Positions 18,484 to 57,310 of a stretch of DNA of 64,000 bases are shown here, one piece after another; the stretch's first letter is position 1, and the number at the start of each line of letters is the position of its first letter. The stretch is taken from the NCBI RefSeq assembly GCF_021869535.1, contig NW_026262723.1, positions 111,228,001 through 111,292,000 on the forward strand, written 5' to 3'. A program made the position numbers and the translations under genes. Under the pieces are notes generated by a model. The model saw nothing but the letters and a program-made list of their open reading frames with translations, was not told the DNA's origin and ran no database searches. Source of the DNA: Mytilus californianus (lineage: Eukaryota).

Positions 18484-19081
18484 GAAACCATGTTTTCATC
18501 TTTGTGGTAATTAAGGATATGATTTTAAAATTATTTTTTGTTGTTGATCATATTAGTATTTTATACAAAATCTGTTAGTATACATACGACGTTTTTACTA
18601 TATATACGGATGGACACTATAGGAAGATTAGACATATATATTGAAGTTCATCAATATTACATACGGTCATATCAACAAATAATATTAGTTTTCTGTTAGT
18701 ACATTGGTCTTATCTATGTACTTACAACAGTTTGCCTTGTACTAGTAATGGTGCGACATACATTGTACTTTTAATCAAACAAACGGAGGAGAAGGTAAAA
18801 TTTAAGGTAAAATTGGGATTAAATTCTATAGTTTGAAGAATTTATCGTTCCAGTTTTGGTGTAGACTATTTACCCTTCGTGTGTTATGACACGTGTTATA
18901 CCATAGCAAGATTACCACTTTTTGAATTTTGTTGGTTTCCAATGCTCTTCAAGTTTATTATTGACAGTTTTGAGCAACTGATGAGTCTTAAGTAGACGAA
19001 ATGTACGTTTGGAGTGATTAATTATAAGCCCGGTATCTTTGGTAAGATTTTACTACCACTAGAATAATGCTTAAAGATTAA

Positions 19082-19752
19082 TGGTTAGTTTTTATAACTG
19101 TATATTACAAGCCTGATATCTTTGGTTAGTTTTTATAACTGTATATTACAAGCCTGATATCTTTGGTTAGTTTTTATAACTGTATATTACAAGCCTGATA
19201 TCTTTGGTTAGTTTTTATAACTGTATATTACAAGCCTGATATCTTTTGTTAGTTTTTATAACTGTATATTACAAGCCTGATATCTTTAGTTAGTTTTTAT
19301 AACTGTATATTACAATCCTGATATCTTTGGTTAGTTTTTATAACTGTATATTACAATCCTGATATCTTTGGTTAGTTTTTATAACTGTATATTACAATCC
19401 TGATGTCTTTGGTAAGTTTTTATAACTGTATATTACAAGCCTGATATCTTTGGTAAGTTTTTTATAACAGCATATTACAATCCTGATATCTTTGGTTAGT
19501 TTTTATAACAGTATATTACAATCCTGATATCTTTGGTTAGTTTTTATAACTGTATACAACAAGCCTGATATCTTTGGTTAGTTTTTTATAACTGCATATT
19601 ACAAGCCTGATATCTTTGGTTAGTTTTAATAACTGTATATTACAATCCTGATATCTTTGGTTAGTTTTTATAACTGTATATTACAAGCCTAATATCTTGG
19701 GTTAGTTTTAATAACTGTATATTACAAGCTTGATATCTTTGGTTAGTTTTTA
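19082..19752. repeat. 41-bp minisatellite, about 16 copies
   Basis: Unit ctgatatctttggttagtttttataactgtatattacaagc. Confidence 0.92.
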
Positions 19753-20249
19753 TGTAACAATAAAATGATAGTAAATGCAGTAAAATATCGAAATTACATA
19801 CATTTTTCACTGTTTGATTAATGCATTTCGATATAATATATGGATAACTACTCTCGCCCAAAAAGATATTCACACAAGAAGTGTGTTTCGCGTTTTCTAT
19901 TCTAAAACAGACAGAGATGGATCGAAAACAATAGAAGTCGATTGAACTCCATAATGGAGAGAACGGGTGCGGCGTCGACAGGGTAAGCATGTTAGCCTAG
20001 TCCTAGCTCACTGATCGACAGTAGACTGACGCGAAGAGGAGGTTGGGAAGGATACCAGGTCAGGTTGACATCAATGGACATGTGGGATCAAGGTCAAAGT
20101 TACCATGTCATATAAATGGGTTGAGAAACCGACACAATGTTATCGATGAACTATGATGTCGATTGCATGAAGAATAATTGAAGTGATAATTACGATATAT
20201 TTTCCTTATAACAAGTTTGAGTAGGTTATGAAGAGTGAGAAGATACCAA

Positions 20250-39449: not shown

Positions 39450-39691
39450 TTATCTGTCCTTGCTTGTGAGCTTGTCAATTAGCTCTTGTAGAGGAGCTAA
39501 CTCTCTCTTCTCAATCAAGTTAAACTCTTGGACAAAGAAAATGAAATGTTTGAAGGACGTGTTAAGATGAGCTTCTTCACTTAGTTGTACCACTTCTTTA
39601 AAGTGTTGATGATATATATGTGCATAAACTCTGAATAGTCTTTTTAATATTGTCTTGGCTATAGCTAGAAAATTCTTCGGAAAGGGCACAC
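39450..39691 (-). CDS. MOB1: MOB kinase activator 1, exon 4 (stop)
   Basis: tatag|VPFPKNF...KRLFRVYAHIYHQHF...HLNTSFKHFIFFVQEFNLI...LTSKDR-TAA. Total CDS 651 nt (216 aa). Confidence 0.97.
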
Positions 39692-39882
39692 CTATAAATA
39701 TACAAACATATTAAATTTTGCAATCTACACATTTTGCAAAGTACATACTAGTAATGATTATGCGTACTCCATATTCTTTGAAAACCCTGTTATTAATACA
39801 AATTCATGGCTTCCCCTGAACTCTTTGGTGAATTCCCTTTACATGTAGAACAATTTTTTTTTGAAGGTCTGTATCATTACAA

Positions 39883-42610: not shown

Positions 42611-43258
42611 TTAAACAATCCTGAATTTATTGAAACAATGTATAAGAGATTTTGAAATAATTGCTGGAATTTTTCAAATTATCTTAAGGGGAAAGGGCAA
42701 TTATTCATTTGGGGTAAGGAGAAGGTATGATAAGGCTACTTCTTCAGTATTATAAATCTTTCAAATAATATTCTTCAGATATTCACAAAACATTTTGAGG
42801 GAAATGCTTATTTTTTTGGAAACAGGAAGTAAAATGGCACTTTATAGCAGAAGAAAAATCATTGAAAATAGTACCAGGACCATGTATACAATTAACATAT
42901 GGTGATTAAGTTTAAGATCTTGCTGGTGTTTAGTGGATAACAGTGAAGCAGGGTGATTGCTGATGGTTTTGGAGATACATGTAACCCATGATTTACTACT
43001 TGTCGTATCATTATCTATTGAATTCACACATAAATATTTCAGAGTGAATCACAACCATTCACTGTGGGTAATGTAATACACTTGTAATATATCATTATCT
43101 ATTGAATTCACACAAAGATATTTCAGAGTGAATCACAAACATTTACTGTGGGATCTTTAATTGCATCACTTTGTGGGTACTGCAATATCAAATAACCAGT
43201 GTTATATTAAATTTAACTACATGTAATCTTAGATCTCCCTGAAGCAAGAGCAACATAC

Positions 43259-43486
43259 CAATTTTGGAAGGAAAGAGGGATTCTTCGTCTAACTGATCTT
43301 GTACCCATGACATGAGATAGTCTATATACTTTGGTGCTGAACATTTTATAGGCTTCTTTACAGTCTGACCATCTGCCCAGTGGTACTCATATTTTGGTCC
43401 AGCCGACATTACAGGACAGGTCTCTTCTGTACAGAACTCTGTTATAGTACCATATAACATATTTATCTGGTTAAAGAAGTCCACAG
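43259..43486 (-). CDS. MOB1: MOB kinase activator 1, exon 3
   Basis: tttag|TVDFFNQINMLYGTITEFCTEETCPVMSAGPKYEYHWADG...LFPSKIG|gtatgt; 228 nt. Confidence 0.97.
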
Positions 43487-43704
43487 CTAAAAATATAAAA
43501 CAAATATCATAAAACAGTTAAATTATAAACTGTCGATGTCTTATTAAATTTTTTATAATTTATACAGCAATCAAAGTACTGTCCTAACAAAAGCTTTGGA
43601 GCTTTATTAAATCGAAATAATAATTGCAAAATGAATTGAAGATTACAGGTTTATTTATATATCCCAGTAGCCAACATGGCCAATTCTACAACAATATAAA
43701 CTGT

Positions 43705-45699
43705 TTTAGAAGCATGTTCACACATTTCCAGGATTGTAACAGATACATTTGTCACACTTTATTTAGAAGCATGTTCTCACATTTCCAGGATTGTAACAGA
43801 TACACTTGTCACACTTTATTTAGAAGCATGTTCACACATTTCCAGGATTGTAACAGATACATTTGTCACACTTTATTTAGAAGCATGTTCTCACATTTCC
43901 AGGATTGTAACAGATACACTTGTCACACTTTATTTAGAAGCATGTTCACACATTTCCAGGATTGTAACAGATACATTTGTCACACTTTATTTAGAAGCAT
44001 GTTCTCACATTTCCAGGATTGTAACAGATACATTTGTCACACTTTATTTAGAAGCATGTTCTCACATTTCCAGGATTGTAACAGATACATTTGTCACACT
44101 TTATTTAGAAGCATGTTCTCACATTTCCAGGATTGTAACAGATACATTTGTCACACTTTATTTAGAAGCATGTTCACACATTTCCAGGATTGTAACAGAT
44201 ACATTTGTCACACTTTATTTAGAAGCATGTTCTCACATTTCCAGGATTGTAACAGATACATTTGTCACACTTTATTTAGAAGCATGTTCACACATTTCCA
44301 GGATTGTAACAGATACATTTGTCACACTTTATTTAGAAGCATGTTCACACATTTCCAGGATTGTAACAGATACATTTGTCACACTTTATTTAGAAGCATG
44401 TTCTCACATTTCCAGGATTGTAACAGATACATTTGTCACACTTTATTTAGAAGCATGTTCACACATTTCCAGGATTGTAACAGATACATTTGTCACACTT
44501 TATTTAGAAGCATGTTCTCACATTTCCAGGATTGTAACAGATACACTTGTCACACTTTATTTAGAAGCATGTTCACACATTTCCAGGATTGTAACAGATA
44601 CATTTGTCACACTTTATTTAGAAGCATGTTCTCACATTTCCAGGATTGTAACAGATACACTTGTCACACTTTATTTAGAAGCATGTTCACACATTTCCAG
44701 GATTGTAACAGATACATTTGTCACACTTTATTTAGAAGCATGTTCTCACATTTCCAGGATTGTAACAGATACATTTGTCACACTTTATTTAGAAGCATGT
44801 TCTCACATTTCCAGGATTGTAACAGATACATTTGTCACACTTTATTTAGAAGCATGTTCTCACATTTCCAGGATTGTAACAGATACATTTGTCACACTTT
44901 ATTTAGAAGCATGTTCACACATTTCCAGGATTGTAACAGATACATTTGTCACACTTTATTTAGAAGCATGTTCTCACATTTCCAGGATTGTAACAGATAC
45001 ATTTGTCACACTTTATTTAGAAGCATGTTCACACATTTCCAGGATTGTAACAGATACATTTGTCACACTTTATTTAGAAGCATGTTCACACATTTCCAGG
45101 ATTGTAACAGATACATTTGTCACACTTTATTTAGAAGCATGTTCTCACATTTCCAGGATTGTAACAGATACATTTGTCACACTTTATTTAGAAGCATGTT
45201 CTCACATTTCCAGGATTGTAACAGATACATTTGTCACACTTTATTTAGAAGCATGTTCACACATTTCCAGGATTGTAACAGATACATTTGTCACACTTTA
45301 TTTAGAAGCATGTTCACACATTTCCAGGATTGTAACAGATACATTTGTCACACTTTATTTAGAAGCATGTTCACACATTTCCAGGATTGTAACAGATACA
45401 TTTGTCACACTTTATTTAGAAGCATGTTCACACATTTCCAGGATTGTAACAGATACATTTGTCACACTTTATTTAGAAGCATGTTCTCACATTTCCAGGA
45501 TTGTAACAGATACATTTGTCACACTTTATTTAGAAGCATGTTCTCACATTACCAGGATTGTAACAGATACATTTGTCACACTTTATTTAGAAGCATGTTC
45601 TCACATTACCAGGATTGTAACAGATACATTTGTCACACTTTATTTAGAAGCATGTTCTCACATTTCCAGGATTGTAACAGATACATTTGTCACACTTTA
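43705..45699. repeat. 57-bp satellite, 35 copies, in MOB1 intron 2
   Basis: Unit tttagaagcatgttc(a/t)cacatttccaggattgtaacagatacatttgtcacacttta; 1995 bp / 57 = 35. Confidence 0.97.
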
Positions 45700-47049
45700 T
45701 TTAATATTTTAACAACAATCTCGGTTTAAGCAAATAGAAAACATGAACAGATAAGAGAACTTTTCGTTTTTTATATAGATTAGACCGTTGGTTTTCCCGT
45801 TAGAATGGTTTTACACTAGTAATTTTTTGGGGCCCTTTATAGCTTACTGTTCGGTGTGAGCCAAGGCTCCGTGTTGAAGACCGTACTGTGACCTATAATG
45901 GTTTACTTTTATAAATTTTGACTTGGATGGAGAGTTGTCTCATCGGCACTCATACCACATCTTCTTATATCTATTTGGGAAGGAGGCTGACATACTGTAT
46001 TCATTTACACCATGTCCTATTTATGTTAATTGATTTAAGTAATGTATTGTCCAAGAGCTGTCGGTTCAAATCTAATCTATTAGTTCAGGTGAAAAAAGTA
46101 GGTCACTGGGATCAATGTTGGATAGCATATCAATGATGAATCTACTTCCTTTATGCTTTCAGGGATGATAAAATACCATGCCAAACTTGAATGGCTTGTA
46201 CCAAATCTGACAGACAAGTAAAATTTACATGTTCAAAATATGTTCCAATTACCTGTCATGGACAAGTAAATTCTGTTAAAGCACAACCAGTACCGAAGGC
46301 ATTTAAAAAAATGTCCATTCAACTACATGTTTGTATAGTATTTGTCATTGGATAGGTGAAGAACTTTGAAATATCCACACTCCTGGTTTTACCATACAAT
46401 TTTGCATTTAGTTTACTAAAACATATCTGAATAATGGTTCTAAAAATATCATTTGAACAGGGACAGAGATGTACATATGGACCAAGAAACATTGCAATAG
46501 TTTCTTTTCTACAACACCCAGACCAATTAATAACAAATTCCTCCTTTAAAGTAATGTTGTTAGATATCAAAATGTACTTTCAATATCTAGCAATTACTGA
46601 AGAAGTTATAGGAAAACAAGTCTAATTGTTTAACTAAAAAAGTCGTATTAAGGCTGTCGCATAGTGGACATTTCTGATTGGACAAGCCATTTAAAGCTAA
46701 GTCAATGTAAGTAGATACAATTATTTGTAAACGAGAATAAATATAGTATTGTACTAAGTTTAAATCTATATTTATTATAAATTCATTGTAATTTCCTGTT
46801 AATAAGTATATAAATCCTTCCCAAACCAATGAGTCATATGACACATACAACGGAAATACATGTACTTTTTGTTGTTTAAACATGTTAACATAAAAAAGGC
46901 TTTTATAGTTTATTAATGTTACCATACACCTATATATATATCATAACTTAAAATAATTTACCAAAAATCTCAATAAAACAAGCATTCTGTGAGTATTACC
47001 TGGCAATACATATTCCCCTACTAGTTAAAAATTCATTGTACTTGAACAA

Positions 47050-47373: not shown

Positions 47374-47634
47374 ACCATCAAAACTTACTGTTAATACTAG
47401 CATGCATCAACTCAATAGAAATTCTCTCTGTCCCCTCTTTGGTAACAAAAAATGTTTCTGTACATATTAGCAATGAAGATGAAAATAGCCATTCGTTCAT
47501 ACGCTTACATGATATACCTCAAATCAAATAAAAATATATGTACATTTACTGCCTCCAAATATTTACGTCTTTCCCGACACATTTTCAGAGGTTAACATTG
47601 ACTGATAAATTGTGTTTTTCCACTAAATACTCAC

Positions 47635-47801
47635 TGTTTACAGCCACCCATTCATTTAGATCTTCTCCTTCAGGTAATACCACAGCCTGCCTAAGATTAC
47701 CACTTCCCAATGTGGCAGCAGCATGTTTCATCAAGTCATACTGATGACTTCCCTCAGGAATATTCTTCTTTGGTTTGAAGGTTTTATTGTTTCTTCCTCC
47801 A
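47635..47801 (-). CDS. MOB1: MOB kinase activator 1, exon 2
   Basis: ttgcag|GGRNNKTFKPKKNIPEGSHQYDLMKHAAATLGSGNLRQAVVLPEGEDLNEWVAVN|gtgagt; 167 nt. Confidence 0.96.
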
Positions 47802-53127: not shown

Positions 53128-54615
53128 ACAATATTATTTTCCTGGTAGAAAGAAAGCTGTATAACTTGTATAACTTTTACAACTATCAATATATAGGAAT
53201 ACAAGTTATGTATATATCTTTATAAGTTCAAATTTAAAATAATTTGCAAAATGCGAACTTTTTCAGATTCCGTTAATTTTAATGAAAATTAAATAGTTTC
53301 GTATTCATGGGTAGCATATTTATTGGCATATGATCGTGCACAGTCTTTAATTAATGGTATACCTGTAGACCCATGGTTAAAATTGTTTAAGCATTCTAAC
53401 GACCAAAAATCAAAACATTATGATTTTAAGATGAAGCAGATGTAAACTGATGAGCCCGAATGTTATTCGTTTTTTAACAAGTGGTTTGTGCATGTTTGTT
53501 TTACTTGTCGTTATACTTAAAAAACGTCGATGATGCTATATAAGAAGAAAAATTTGAAAAAAATCATTGTTATCTCTCAGTTATTTGATATATTATATTA
53601 ATTTATGTATAATTCATTGTAATTATTCTGCTCCTTGTGGGCGCTTTGATTAGCAAAATAAAGTATCTGTATCTGTATACATAAATATTAAAAGCGGTCG
53701 GCATGGTTTACAAATCCATTTTAAAGACATAACACGGCTCTCTTTTGAGTTTTTACCCGACAAGCAAGGCATAAAAACACAAACAAGCATTCAATAATTT
53801 TAAATGAATACCAGGGCCAGACCCTTCTGCTATCATATAAACAATAAAGAAGTGTTAATAACTTGGTTGTTTTAGATTACATTGAAATCTTTAGGAATAA
53901 GTTATTTAAAGTACTAATAAGTTTTCATGCGATAGGATCGTATCTTAGTTTACGAGCTCTATAACCTACATGACCGTAAATTTGAAATATGATGTAATTT
54001 CCCGTTAGTGATAGGTTTCCTACGTGTGCAGCCATGAAACCGTTTCAATCCAAAATCGATCACGGCGAAGTCAAAGTCATTGTAAGTAAGTAGGTAAGTA
54101 ATGGTGTTATTTTTAGAAGGGTAACACCATAAAACCATAGATGATAAAACTAATCTTTCCCGAGTCCCTCCCGGACACAAAAAAAAAAGAAATACAATAT
54201 ATACCGTGAACTATAATAATGAAATATATAAAACACACTATGTATATAAGTACGTATATATACAAGTCTAAATTGAAAACAACGTTCAAACCTATGATTG
54301 CGTTGGATAAAAACCGCAATTTTTATACGTGTGCATGCAAAAACAAATTTCTTGTTAGAGGGGTCAAAATACAGCACAAACAACATTTCCCAAAAGACCA
54401 AAAAAGTGAAAAAGTATATTTTAACAAAACGCATTTGACTAACAGGTCGAACAACAAATGTTCTTAAACCCTGCTGACTGCCAATGGCGATTGCCAAATA
54501 AACGGATCACAAGGTGTAATAAATGGATCTTAATTAAAAATTTAATACCAAACAGAAAACAATAAACTTGCGGCAAAGATGGTATACCGCAAACAAAGGT
54601 GCAAAGATTTTTGTA

Positions 54616-54657
54616 CACCATATCCGGATTTCGACAATTAATGTCTCTTCAGTGATG
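54616..54657 (-). ncRNA. Type I hammerhead ribozyme (identical copy on the minus strand)
   Basis: Exact reverse complement of 55220-55261. Confidence 0.85.
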
Positions 54658-55219
54658 TTAGGAGTCGAAACAGTATTTGGAAGGCCATGTAATTTACCTC
54701 AATTTAGGATAGACTCTCGAATTTTGAGGAGTCAAATTAGGATGAACGGATCATATAAACCCGAAGGCAAATATAATACAAGCCCAAACGAAAAAATATA
54801 AACAAGTCTAAATTGAAAACAACGTTCAAACCTATGATTGCGTTGGATAAAAACCGCAGTCAGCAGGGTTTAAGAACATTTGTTGTTCGACCTGTTAGTC
54901 AAATGCGTTTTGTTAAAATATACTTTTTCACTTTTTTGGTCTTTTGGGAAATGTTGTTTGTGCTGTATTTTGACCCCTCTAACAAGAAATTTGTTTTTGC
55001 ATGCACACGTATAAAAATTGCGGTTTTTATCCAACGCAATCATTGGTTTGAACGTTGTTTTCAATTTAGACTTGTTTATATTTTTTCGTTTGGGCTTGTA
55101 TTATATTTGCCTTCGGGTTTATATGATCCGTTCATCCTAATTTGACTCCTCAAAATTCGAGAGTCTATCCTAAATTGAGGTAAATTACATGGCCTTCCAA
55201 ATACTGTTTCGATTCCTAA

Positions 55220-55261
55220 CATCACTGAAGAGACATTAATTGTCGAAATCCGGATATGGTG
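55220..55261 (+). ncRNA. Type I hammerhead ribozyme (intact core)
   Basis: CATCA-CTGAAGA-GACA-ttaat-TGTC-GAAA-TCCGGA-TA/TGGTG: all conserved core bases, stem I CATCA:TGGTG, stem II GACA:TGTC, palindromic stem III, AUA cleavage triplet (cut after 55256). Confidence 0.85.
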
Positions 55262-55796
55262 TACAAAAATCTTTGCACCTTTGTTTGCGGTATACCATCT
55301 TTGCCGCAAGTTTATTGTTTTCTGTTTGGTATTAAATTTTTAATTAAGATCCATTTATTACACCTTGTGATCCGTTTATTTGGCAATCGCCAATGGCAGT
55401 CAGCAGGGTTTAAGAACATTTGTTGTTCGACCTGTTAGTCAAATGCGTTTTGTTAAAATATACTTTTTCACTTTTTTGGTCTTTTGGGAAATGTTGTTTG
55501 TGCTGTATTTTGACCCCTCTAACAAGTACGTATATATATATATACAAGTAGCCTTCATGCTTAATTTGGAATAGAAAATTATTAAGATATTTAATAAAAT
55601 ATAAATTTGCATTCATAACTACTGATCTAGCTTACATTTTGATATCATGAACAAATAATTTGTTTCTTCTAAATTTCTTCTTTCTTTTAAAATCACAGTC
55701 AAGAGAGAACGTAAAGCAGGGGGTAAATGGTTCCATAATGTTATCCCTGAATGATGAAATGTTTTCTTCATAAAAATATATTATGGTCGAGACACA

Positions 55797-57310
55797 ATGA
55801 AATTGAGAATGGAAACGGAGAATGCGTCAAAGAGACAACAACCCGACCAAAGAGCAGAAAACAGCCCAAGGTCACCAATGGGTCTTCAACATAGCGAGAA
55901 AATCCCGCACCCGGAGACGGGCTTCAGCTGGCCCCTAAACAATAATGTATACAAGTTTAACGAAAATGGACGTCACACTAAACTCCGAAACATATAAAGG
56001 AACCAAAATTTAAAAAAAACATACAAGACTAACAAAGGCAAGAGATTCCTGACTTGACACAGACGCGAAAATGCGGCGGGTTAAACATGTTTTGTGAGAT
56101 CTCAACCCTCCCCTATACCTCTAGCCAATGTGGAGTAAACAAATACACAGCAATACGCACAGTAAAATTCAGTTTAAAAGAAGTCCGAGTCCGATGTTAG
56201 AATAGGTAACAGAAGAAACTAAGCAAAATGACAATAATCAACATAAATTAACAAAGGACTACTAGCACTTACTCACAGATCTTAGCCAGCTCGATCCAGA
56301 CCTCAATTAAACCAGAGACATATAGTACTATATGTCTCTGATTAAACTGATTGAAAGATTATGTCTTTATCATATGAAAATCAAGCACAATCCCTCCCGT
56401 TAGGGGTTTGGTATCATACCATCATAAAATATACGATATAAGAACATAACCCGTATCATGCCAACAACTGGTTTTAGAATAAATGTGTTTATTTCCGAAG
56501 ACCCTATATGAGTGAATCAATATTAATTCCAAAAATTGCCATCTTTAATGACCTGACAATAGTATCGTACCTATATCCCTTCTGAATAAGTCTGTTTTAA
56601 GGTTTGGTTAGCTTTTGAGGTGAATGACGACATTTATGTGCTTTTTATAGAACTTTATCATAAAAGATGGGAGGTGAAATACCAGAACGTATAAGGTGTC
56701 TGCACGTTGATTTATATTTACGAATGATGTCCTTGTACCAATGATAAAATTTAGTAAATGTTTTGACAAGTTTGTGATATCGAAAACCCTGGTGTAATAT
56801 TTTTTTCAGTAATATAAAGATTTCTTTCGTTAAAATCAAATACGTTGTTACATACACGAGCGAATCGAACAAGTTGACATATGTAAACACCATAAGATGT
56901 CACCATCTAAAAATGGATATTTAACAATACGAAATGAAAAATCATCTCTTTTATCATAAATTTTAGTATTAAGCTTTCCGTTAAAAATAAAAATATCAAG
57001 ATCAAGGAAAGGGCAGTATTCATTGTTAGTATTACCTTTATTTAAAGTCAGTTCAGCAGGATAAATCTTTTTAGTGTACATACTGAAGTCGTAATTATTA
57101 CGAGCCAATATATCATTCAAATATCTAAAAGTATTATTCAACTTTTGTATCAGATGTTGTTTCAATGGGTCTTTGTTGATTTTAGTCATAAATTGTTACT
57201 CGTAACAATACAAAAACAGTTCCGCAATAAGTGGTGCAGTTATTTACCTTTGGAATTCCGATAACTTGACGATATACGGACTCTTCATAGCGAACAAAAA
57301 TGTTATCTTG
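55797..57310 (-). mobile_element. Penelope-like retroelement remnant, second subfamily (RT plus long tail)
   Basis: Minus-strand VYRQVIGIP...CAPLIAELFLYCYE...FRYLNDIL...CPFLDLDI...KIYDKRDDFSFRIVKYPFLDG. The tail matches the dispersed repeat at 49200-49392 and 52203-52272. Confidence 0.75.

What the first reader, a model, noticed from the sequence alone, without database searches (positions are those of the whole stretch)
55220..55261. Catalytically intact type I hammerhead ribozyme in a 540-bp non-coding repeat (retrozyme-like)
Seen: CATCA CTGAAGA GACA ttaat TGTC GAAA TCCGGA TA TGGTG has the full CUGANGA/GAAA core, A15.1-U16.1, a 4-bp stem II, stem I with one G-U pair, a palindromic stem III and an NUH (AUA) site. 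An identical copy lies on the minus strand at 54616-54657. Known: type I hammerheads with short palindromic stem III mark Penelope-like elements and non-autonomous retrozymes, which have been reported in mussel and yield circular RNAs. Inference: this is a young retrozyme family whose 540-nt monomer is larger than the roughly 0.2-0.4 kb usually reported, located about 1.3 kb upstream of MOB1.
Basis: partly seen in the sequence, partly recalled or inferred. Interest (0 to 1): 0.8.

Follow-up and report, generated by a model that had tools for sequence, protein, structure and literature searches.

The report
Hammerhead retrozyme insertion in a mussel
The flagged 42 bases are a real, sequence-intact self-cutting hammerhead RNA motif in a very abundant 540-base non-coding jumping repeat of a mussel genome; this is a new family of an already published kind (animal retrozymes), and this copy is a dead-end, head-to-head insertion.

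Summary
Observation confirmed. The motif is exact at 55220-55261 (+) and 54616-54657 (-). It has every conserved hammerhead core base, a 6-bp helix I, a 4-bp helix II and a 2-bp helix III capped by the palindromic loop CCGG. Rfam Hammerhead_1 aligns end to end but below its threshold (22.4 against 34 bits).

It is not chance. The genome holds 9,185 exact copies against 0 for the control pattern, mostly spaced about 540 bp in head-to-tail arrays.

The only homology to the published roughly 355-bp mussel retrozyme is about 100 nt around the ribozyme. Within it, 4 of 12 stem pairs changed on both sides.

Insertions behave like retrotransposed copies. The 3' end is fixed at unit position 216-223, the 5' ends vary, and 16 of 20 arrays sit in (TA)n.

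The window copy is one 1,256-bp event with a 20-bp target duplication. Its two arms are inverted and permuted and came from one template. Each strand carries a single ribozyme, so this locus cannot release a 540-nt unit.

Cleavage, circular RNA and the Penelope-like helper are inferred, not shown. RNA reads were inconclusive. The nearest detectable MOB1 exon is 7.5 kb away, not 1.3 kb.

This scan noted the same family before on other DNA of this genome.

Verdict: new member of a known kind.

The parts
54248..54267 (.). Left target-site duplication (20 bp), a short (TA)n-containing target
   Evidence: The same string, with three more TA, recurs at 55524-55549. Its last 6 bases also match the element's 3' end (microhomology).
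54268..54858 (-). Canonical arm of the insertion. It covers unit positions 161-540 then 1-216/223, and its 3' end abuts the left duplication.
   Evidence: Its 3' end is the family's usual 3' terminus, seen in 16 of 20 arrays.
54616..54657 (-). Hammerhead motif of the minus-strand arm, identical to the flagged one
54856..54858 (.). Head-to-head joint: 3 bases (GCA) shared by both arms
   Evidence: Direct-repeat families D1 and D2 overlap at 54856-54858
54859..55523 (+). Inverted arm: one full 540-bp unit (54859-55398) plus unit positions 1-125/128. It ends at a non-canonical position next to the right duplication.
   Evidence: It shares the template-specific variants at unit positions 90 and 113 with the minus arm.
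55219..55262 (+). The flagged type I hammerhead, with helix I extended to 6 bp. Predicted cleavage is between 55256 and 55257.
   Evidence: RF00163 full-length alignment, 22.4 bits
55524..55549 (.). Right target-site duplication (26 bp)

Best explanation
The motif is the ribozyme of a non-autonomous, non-coding retroelement of the 'non-LTR retrozyme' kind. I call the family U540; its unit is window 54859-55398.

SHOWN
- The ribozyme has the complete hammerhead core and type I topology.
- It is homologous to, and co-varies with, the ribozyme of the published roughly 355-bp mussel retrozyme.
- The family has about 9,000 intact ribozyme copies, roughly 5,000 loci by extrapolation from the first 100 places.
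- The units form head-to-tail arrays.
- The 3' end is fixed at unit position 216-223, where a UAUAU tract merges into the (TA)n target.
- The 5' ends are variable, down to 17-nt stubs, and short inverted pieces are frequent at the 5' junction.
- The window copy is one young event: a 20-bp target duplication, two arms made from one template, and 3 private changes in 1,256 bp.

INFERRED
- Multimeric sense transcripts of tandem arrays fold two neighbouring ribozymes into a double hammerhead through the 8-nt palindrome of helix III. They cut after unit position 398 and release 540-nt monomers.
- The monomers are ligated to circles, as shown experimentally for the sister family.
- A Penelope-like reverse transcriptase/endonuclease nicks (TA)n. 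It primes on the UAUAU tract of a circular or multimeric RNA by microhomology and copies more than one unit.
- In this window a second priming, or a strand switch, at the other nick made the inverted arm.

The local copy carries one ribozyme per strand. It cannot excise a unit and is a dead-end insertion. A transcript across it would instead fold into a roughly 508-bp hairpin.
For: Motif and chance.

Homology and covariation with the RF00163-positive family:
- Only about 100 nt round the ribozyme align, at 63-65% identity.
- 97% of cells are paired, against 14-48% when the partners are slid.
- 4 of 12 pairs changed on both sides.

Conservation: in 13 older units (89-95% identity) the ribozyme differs at 2.3% of positions against 6.1% elsewhere, Fisher p = 7e-5.

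Dimer: the minimum-energy fold of two copies is the double hammerhead at -26.7 kcal/mol. Two monomers give 2 x -9.1, and the single-hammerhead fold only -3.1.

Arrays, fixed 3' end, variable 5' end and (TA)n target.

Sister family: its 3' end is fixed about 42 nt after its cut site, and 0 of 8 insertions lie in (TA)n.

Single event from one template, and non-coding.

Literature:
- Mussel retrozymes give circular RNAs, and their ribozyme cleaves in vitro (PMC7229834).
- The canonical metazoan hammerhead works as a dimer (PMC4209133).
- Tandem/inverted insertions, 5' truncation and (TA)n bias are Penelope-like hallmarks (PMC8557442).
Against: - No cleavage or circle was shown for this family.
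- In two RNA-seq runs, reads lie on both strands, and many run from unit position 223 into (AT)n flanks.
- Read depth peaks just upstream of the fixed 3' end, as copy number would. No molecule ends pile up at 55256/55257. That pattern fits read-through or background transcription as well as anything.
- The Rfam score is below threshold.
- Within the young copies the ribozyme is not significantly better conserved than the rest (0.6% against 0.8%, p = 0.23). Even in old copies its window ranks only 124th of 540.
- The 540-nt RNA is barely more structured than shuffles (z = -1.8), unlike the 'highly self-paired' published circles.
- No helper element was identified.
- Genomic 5' ends are not enriched at the cut site.
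- Two long arrays contain recurring length variants of 507 and 581 bp. This points to some DNA-level array growth as well.
Confidence: 0.8

Rival explanations
1. U540 is essentially a satellite DNA that grows by unequal crossing-over or replication slippage. The hammerhead is an inherited relic with no present role.
For: - Arrays of 15 or more units exist, one spanning about 24 unit lengths (19 exact ribozymes), with recurring 507- and 581-bp variant units inside two of them.
- RNA reads look proportional to copy number and come from both strands.
- There is no extra conservation of the ribozyme among young copies.
Against: - Dispersal is wide: 53 loci per 100 ribozymes, most of them with 1-3 units.
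- The 3' terminus is constant, with all degrees of 5' truncation down to 17 nt.
- This copy has a target-site duplication.
- Compensatory stem changes separate it from the sister family.
- Old copies show lower divergence in the ribozyme than elsewhere.
Confidence: 0.1
2. The 540-bp unit is the pseudo-LTR of an autonomous Penelope-like element. The arrays are solo or tandem pseudo-LTRs, not a separate non-autonomous family.
For: - The insertion architecture is that of Penelope-like elements: tandem plus inverted pieces, 5' truncation and a (TA)n target.
- A 2026 preprint finds vertebrate retrozymes to be sister to pseudo-LTRs.
Against: - In 24 genomic regions holding about 159 unit pieces, no coding insert interrupts the 540-bp period.
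- The longest stop-free run in the unit trimer is 104 codons.
- The 19-nt 3' tail is found only on U540's own copies, with no second consistent upstream sequence.
- The ribozyme has the canonical architecture, not the Penelope min-HHR one.
Confidence: 0.08
3. A chance resemblance to the hammerhead consensus in AT-rich repeat DNA.
For: - The Rfam score is below the gathering threshold.
- The isolated 55-nt RNA folds no better than shuffles (z = -0.64).
Against: - The descriptor gives 0.01 hits per simulated window.
- RF00163 aligns over its full length.
- The flanks are homologous to a bona fide hammerhead family, with compensatory changes in all three helices.
Confidence: 0.02

Closest known systems
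Mussel non-LTR retrozymes with type I hammerheads (Cervera & de la Pena 2020, NAR, PMC7229834). They are present in this genome as roughly 355-bp units that score over the RF00163 threshold.
   Same: - Same ribozyme architecture: helix I 6 bp, helix II 4 bp, helix III 2 bp plus a palindromic tetraloop.
- About 100 nt round the ribozyme are homologous.
- Both are non-coding, AT-rich head-to-tail arrays with a fixed 3' end and variable 5' ends.
   Different: - The unit is 540 bp, not 350-390 bp, and the other roughly 430 nt are unrelated.
- All three stems differ through compensatory changes. N7 is A, not U, and the cleavage triplet is AUA, not GUC.
- The 3' end lies 358-365 nt after the cut site (unit 216-223), not about 42 nt.
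- It inserts in (TA)n in 16 of 20 arrays, against 0 of 8.
- It is about twice as abundant: 9,185 exact copies against 4,061 by a looser pattern.
- Copies are 98-99% alike, against 80-95%.
Penelope-like elements and their insertion mode (PMC8557442, PMC4209133)
   Same: - Partial tandems, an adjacent inverted 5'-truncated copy, heavy 5' truncation and (TA)n bias, as described for Naiad and proposed for Neptune.
- Ribozyme pairs 100-700 bp apart on opposite strands are reported for these elements. The two copies here are 604 bp apart.
   Different: - U540 has no RT/GIY-YIG ORF.
- The ribozyme is not the min-HHR type, which has helix II of 7-8 bp, helix I of 4-5 bp and no helix III.
- Naiads, the published (TA)n-targeting clade, are reported to lack hammerheads.
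Newt satellite 2 and axolotl retrozymes; double-hammerhead self-cleavage (Forster et al. 1988, as cited in PMC4209133)
   Same: A weak helix III with a palindromic loop. Activity is expected only when two copies pair, and the double hammerhead is predicted as the minimum-energy dimer.
   Different: Different phylum, unit sequence and unit size (about 330-350 bp). Dimer dependence here is predicted only.
L1 twin priming (5' inversion)
   Same: In this copy both 3' ends face outward next to the target duplication, and both 5' ends meet at a 3-nt microhomology.
   Different: - The two arms are circularly permuted multimers of one unit, so the template was a circle or a multimer.
- The enzyme is presumably a GIY-YIG Penelope-like one, not an L1.

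Membership tests
Hammerhead ribozyme, type I (Rfam RF00163) | Conserved core C3 U4 G5 A6 N7 G8 A9 ... G12 A13 A14 | tested here: met
   CUGAAGA and GAA at the right places
Hammerhead ribozyme, type I (Rfam RF00163) | G10.1-C11.1 and A15.1-U16.1 pairs; residue 17 is not G | tested here: met
   Helix II opens with G-C, A15.1 and U16.1 are present, and H17 is A
Hammerhead ribozyme, type I (Rfam RF00163) | Three helices with helix I open (type I topology), supported by covariation | tested here: met
   97% of cells paired and 4 of 12 pairs with changes on both sides against the sister family; slid controls 14-48%
Hammerhead ribozyme, type I (Rfam RF00163) | Score at or above Rfam's gathering threshold (34 bits) | tested here: not met
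   No hit at gathering. 22.4 bits with a full-length alignment in a 71-nt search.
Hammerhead ribozyme, type I (Rfam RF00163) | Site-specific self-cleavage | not testable with these tools
   RNA-seq shows no pile of ends at 55256/55257, but these libraries are not suited to show it
Animal non-LTR retrozyme | A type I hammerhead in every unit of short head-to-tail repeats | tested here: met
   Met genome-wide, with about 540-bp spacing of exact ribozymes. Not met at this locus, which has one ribozyme per strand.
Animal non-LTR retrozyme | Non-coding, low GC, no LTR/PBS/PPT | tested here: met
   34% GC. Longest stop-free run is 104 codons in a trimer. PBS and PPT were not specifically searched.
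Animal non-LTR retrozyme | Retrotransposon-type insertion with target duplications longer than 4 bp | tested here: met
   20-bp duplication here. Elsewhere the duplications are masked by (TA)n.
Animal non-LTR retrozyme | Expressed as unit-length circular RNA | tested here: inconclusive
   Reads are present in RNA runs, but on both strands and running into flanks. A circle junction cannot be told from a tandem junction.
Animal non-LTR retrozyme | Co-occurrence with, and mobilisation by, Penelope-like elements | not tested
   Literature and earlier scan notes only. No shared 3' tail with another element was found.
Penelope-like element pseudo-LTR with min-HHR | min-HHR architecture: long helix II, short helix I, bulged base before 10.1, no helix III | tested here: not met
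   Helix II 4 bp, helix I 6 bp, no bulge, helix III present
Penelope-like element pseudo-LTR with min-HHR | Flanks an RT plus GIY-YIG ORF | tested here: not met
   No coding insert in 24 regions
Satellite DNA | Long homogeneous arrays at few loci, grown by DNA-level mechanisms | tested here: inconclusive
   Some long arrays hold recurring length variants. Most loci, however, are short, dispersed and 5'-truncated.

The most novel reading that the evidence does not exclude
U540 would be a chimeric retrozyme. It kept the roughly 100-nt ribozyme module of the older mussel retrozyme and acquired a new body and a new 3' end. That switched it to a different, (TA)n-specific Penelope-like helper, possibly Naiad or Neptune, and Naiads themselves lack hammerheads. 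Priming would be by microhomology between the nicked (TA)n and an internal UAUAU tract of a circular RNA. That would explain why the fixed 3' end lies 358-365 nt from the cut site. If so, the most abundant hammerhead family of this mussel genome is an undescribed one that shows modular helper switching by retrozymes.
Probability: 0.3. Interest if true: 0.55.

Novelty: new member of a known kind. Interest (0 to 1): 0.4.

Why it matters
Retrozymes are the main known natural source of ribozyme-made circular RNAs in animals, and how they move is still inferred.

This family offers unusually clean genomic evidence. It has thousands of near-identical copies, a sharply fixed 3' end far from the cut site, a specific (TA)n target, and a sister family in the same genome with a different 3' end and target. 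Together these make two questions testable:
- Is the template a circle or a multimer?
- Which Penelope-like clade moves which retrozyme?

For genome annotation, about 5 Mb of this assembly (about 0.3%) belongs to this family. Rfam's threshold misses its ribozyme.

Tried and rejected
1. Rfam at gathering score on the whole window gave nothing. Rfam at E <= 10 on 2.2 kb gave only noise hits to speF over the core. The hammerhead model appeared only in a 71-nt search.

2. Within-family conservation in young copies has no power: 0.6% against 0.8%.

3. RNA evidence came from two raw RNA-seq runs and two contig sets. Reads lie on both strands, run through into flanks, and show no ends at the cut site. 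They cannot tell a circle from a tandem junction.

4. A search for a helper sharing the 3' tail returned only U540's own mutated or extremely truncated copies.

5. An earlier scan note says Naiad tails carry a twister. RF02684 on the genome found nothing at E <= 0.001, so I could not collect Naiad tails that way.

6. Test for run-off 5' ends at the cut site: only about 11 junctions lay in the 10-nt zone, 5 of them exactly at the site. The ATAT there is itself a (TA)n microhomology, so this shows no enrichment and gives no evidence for or against cleavage.

Junction statistics therefore rest on 20 arrays.

8. Pfam on the ORFs right of the insertion gave nothing.

9. Full-text search for the motif string found no paper.

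10. The thermodynamic z-scores of the isolated motif (-0.64) and of the 540-nt monomer (-1.8) are unremarkable.

Full report
THE OBSERVATION

The 42-nt string is present exactly at 55220-55261 on the plus strand and at 54616-54657 on the minus strand.

A rule-based type I hammerhead descriptor asks for the CUGANGA core, a helix II hairpin, GAAA, a short helix III closed by A15.1-U16.1, a non-G residue 17 and a complementary helix I. It finds only these two sites in the 64-kb window. Helix I is 6 bp with one G-U, helix II is 4 bp, and helix III is 2 bp under a CCGG loop.

Sequences simulated from the window's own trinucleotide statistics give 0.01 loose hits per window and none in 300 at the observed stem lengths.

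Rfam reports nothing at gathering score. When only 71 nt are searched, RF00163 Hammerhead_1 aligns over its whole length (model 1-45, window 55219-55262) at 22.4 bits against a threshold of 34. The predicted cut is between 55256 and 55257.

THE REPEAT AND THE LOCAL ANATOMY

The unit (U540) is window 54859-55398. The repeat-bearing stretch runs from 54256 to 55526 and consists of two arms in opposite orientation:
- The minus-strand arm covers unit positions 161-540 and then 1 to about 220.
- The plus-strand arm covers one full unit plus positions 1-128.
- The two 5' ends meet head to head and share 3 bases at 54856-54858.
- The two 3' ends face outward.

A 20-bp string at 54248-54267 recurs, with three extra TA, at 55524-55549. 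The 1,256 bp between are therefore one insertion with a target-site duplication.

Both arms carry the same two departures from the family consensus, at unit positions 90 and 113, so they were copied from one template. Only 3 private changes separate them from it, so the event is young.

The finding's ribozyme sits in the arm whose 3' end is atypical. The other arm has the family's normal 3' end. Each strand has only one ribozyme, so this locus cannot release a unit-length RNA. A transcript across it would form a roughly 508-bp hairpin.

THE FAMILY IN THE GENOME

The assembly is 1.65 Gb, and earlier notes of this scan call it a mussel.
- The exact 42-mer occurs 9,185 times, against 0 for the reversed control.
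- Among the first 100 places there are 53 loci: 35 with a single ribozyme, 18 with two or more on one strand at about 540-bp spacing, and 3 with both strands.
- A BLAST search of the unit finds long head-to-tail arrays at 98-99% identity and a few older ones at 90-95%.
- The unit is 34% GC. Its longest stop-free run in a trimer is 104 codons.

I fetched twenty arrays with 2-kb flanks:
- Sixteen end at unit position 216-223, in a short T/A tract that runs straight into (AT)n.
- All twenty 5' ends differ.
- About fourteen 5' junctions also lie in (TA)n.
- Five have a short inverted piece of the unit at the 5' junction.

A pattern search for the last 17 nt shows copies truncated down to those 17 nt inside (TA)n.

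This is the signature of target-primed reverse transcription from a fixed start. The tandem/inverted architecture and the (TA)n bias are the ones published for Penelope-like elements (PMC8557442).

IS THE RIBOZYME REAL? COMPARISON WITH THE KNOWN MUSSEL FAMILY

RF00163 run on the whole genome hits a different family at 34-45 bits. That family sits in units of about 355 bp. A degenerate pattern counts 4,061 copies with two main loop-2 variants. This matches the two published mussel motifs of 2,880 and 1,681 copies in 350-390-bp repeats, which give abundant circular RNA and cleave in vitro (PMC7229834).

U540 and this family align only over about 100 nt centred on the ribozyme, at 63-65% identity. 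In an alignment of 4 U540 and 11 sister-family ribozymes:
- 97% of cells are paired, against 14-48% when partners are slid.
- Four of the twelve pairs differ on both sides: one in helix I, two in helix II, one in helix III.

These are few independent events, essentially two lineages, but they fall in all three helices.

In 13 older U540 units the ribozyme differs from the consensus at 2.3% of positions against 6.1% elsewhere (p = 7e-5). Its window is only the 124th best conserved of 540. In young units there is no difference.

HOW IT WOULD WORK

By the published definition, canonical metazoan type I hammerheads have helix I of 6 bp, helix II of 4 bp and a helix III of 1-2 bp under a small palindromic loop. 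They are active as dimers in tandem transcripts (PMC4209133). U540 fits this exactly and does not fit the Penelope 'min-HHR'.

Folding agrees:
- Alone, the 55-nt region prefers a non-hammerhead fold (-9.1 kcal/mol; the hammerhead fold is -3.1; z = -0.64).
- Two copies have as their minimum-energy structure the symmetric double hammerhead, with an 8-bp intermolecular helix III and helices I in trans (-26.7 kcal/mol).

The fixed 3' end lies 358-365 nt downstream of the cut site, and insertions span several units. The template therefore cannot be a cleaved linear monomer primed at its end. It must be a circle or an uncleaved multimer primed internally. I infer that the UAUAU tract anneals to the nicked (TA)n.

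The sister family has its fixed 3' end about 42 nt after its cut site, and none of its 8 insertions lies in (TA)n. The two families therefore probably use different helpers or signals. All of this paragraph beyond the geometry is inference.

WHAT DID NOT WORK OR ARGUES AGAINST

RNA reads from two species labels cover the unit at roughly 150-230 reads per kb per million, but the signal is ambiguous:
- The reads lie on both strands and are mostly 90-99% alike.
- Many run from unit position 223 into (AT)n.
- Depth peaks just upstream of the fixed 3' end, as copy number would.
- No molecule ends pile up at the cut site.

This is as expected from read-through or background signal, and these poly-A/cDNA libraries are poor at catching circles.

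Other negative or neutral results:
- The 540-nt RNA is only marginally more stable than shuffles (z = -1.8).
- Genomic 5' ends are not enriched at the cut site.
- No helper was identified.
- Two long arrays carry recurring 507- or 581-bp variant units. Rolling-circle copying of one circle would not produce these, which suggests DNA-level growth too.
Mob1-domain exons lie at 39489-39695, 43257-43487 and 47570-47716 on the minus strand.

COMPARISON AND NOVELTY

The kind is known: animal non-LTR retrozymes, including in mussel (PMC7229834). Their derivation from Penelope-like elements has been argued for vertebrates, with unit lengths of 51-972 bp (bioRxiv 10.64898/2026.07.22.740005). So 540 bp is not exceptional.

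What seems undescribed is this family itself:
- No paper in the searchable library prints the motif.
- It is about twice as abundant as the published mussel ribozyme.
- It has a different body, 3' end and target.

Earlier notes of this scan on the same genome (s1-302566, s1-274867, and s1-282026 on this window) had already flagged the 538/540-bp unit, its (TA)n sites and the inverted permuted insertion. I re-derived those points independently here.

Verdict: a real feature, a new member of a known kind, of moderate interest.

Noticed in passing
window 18977-19753: A 41-bp tandem array (16 copies, 94% matches) is about 76% similar to the 3' tail of the roughly 355-bp sister retrozyme, the 37 nt just after its cut site. 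It is preceded at 18977-19001 by a 25-nt, 92% match to that family's ribozyme region. It looks like a retrozyme tail that expanded into a minisatellite.
   Followed up: partly
window 56848-57189 (-): A 113-aa ORF has no Pfam hit. Its nearest Atlas clusters carry HTH_animal and RVT_1 (score 0.89, a lead only). It is probably a decayed retroelement fragment 1.3 kb right of the insertion.
   Followed up: partly
window 43705-45703: A 57-bp tandem repeat (35 copies, 98% matches) creates a spurious 701-aa ORF. It lies just beside a Mob1-domain exon at 43257-43487 on the minus strand.
   Followed up: no
window 39489-39695, 43257-43487, 47570-47716 (-): Three exons match Pfam Mob1_phocein (E 2e-25, 1e-29 and 2e-4). 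The gene runs on the minus strand, so the retrozyme lies on its 5' side, at least 7.5 kb from the first detectable exon.
   Followed up: partly
L013-L016 (C57:21494002-21502391) and L002-L022 (C132:22416442-22424662): Long U540 arrays contain recurring 507-bp or 581-bp variant units every 3-5 units. Copying of a single circular template would not give this, which hints at unequal crossing-over or mixed templates.
   Followed up: no
window 54351-54858 with 55019-55526: The two arms form a 508-bp, 99% inverted repeat with a 160-bp spacer. This is a potential long hairpin RNA or small-RNA source and a fragile palindrome.
   Followed up: no
loose ends at window 55248/55249: RNA reads reveal a diverged subfamily. 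Its sequence departs from U540 right after the GAA of the ribozyme, so helix III and the cut site are replaced. Some expressed relatives therefore carry a broken ribozyme.
   Followed up: no
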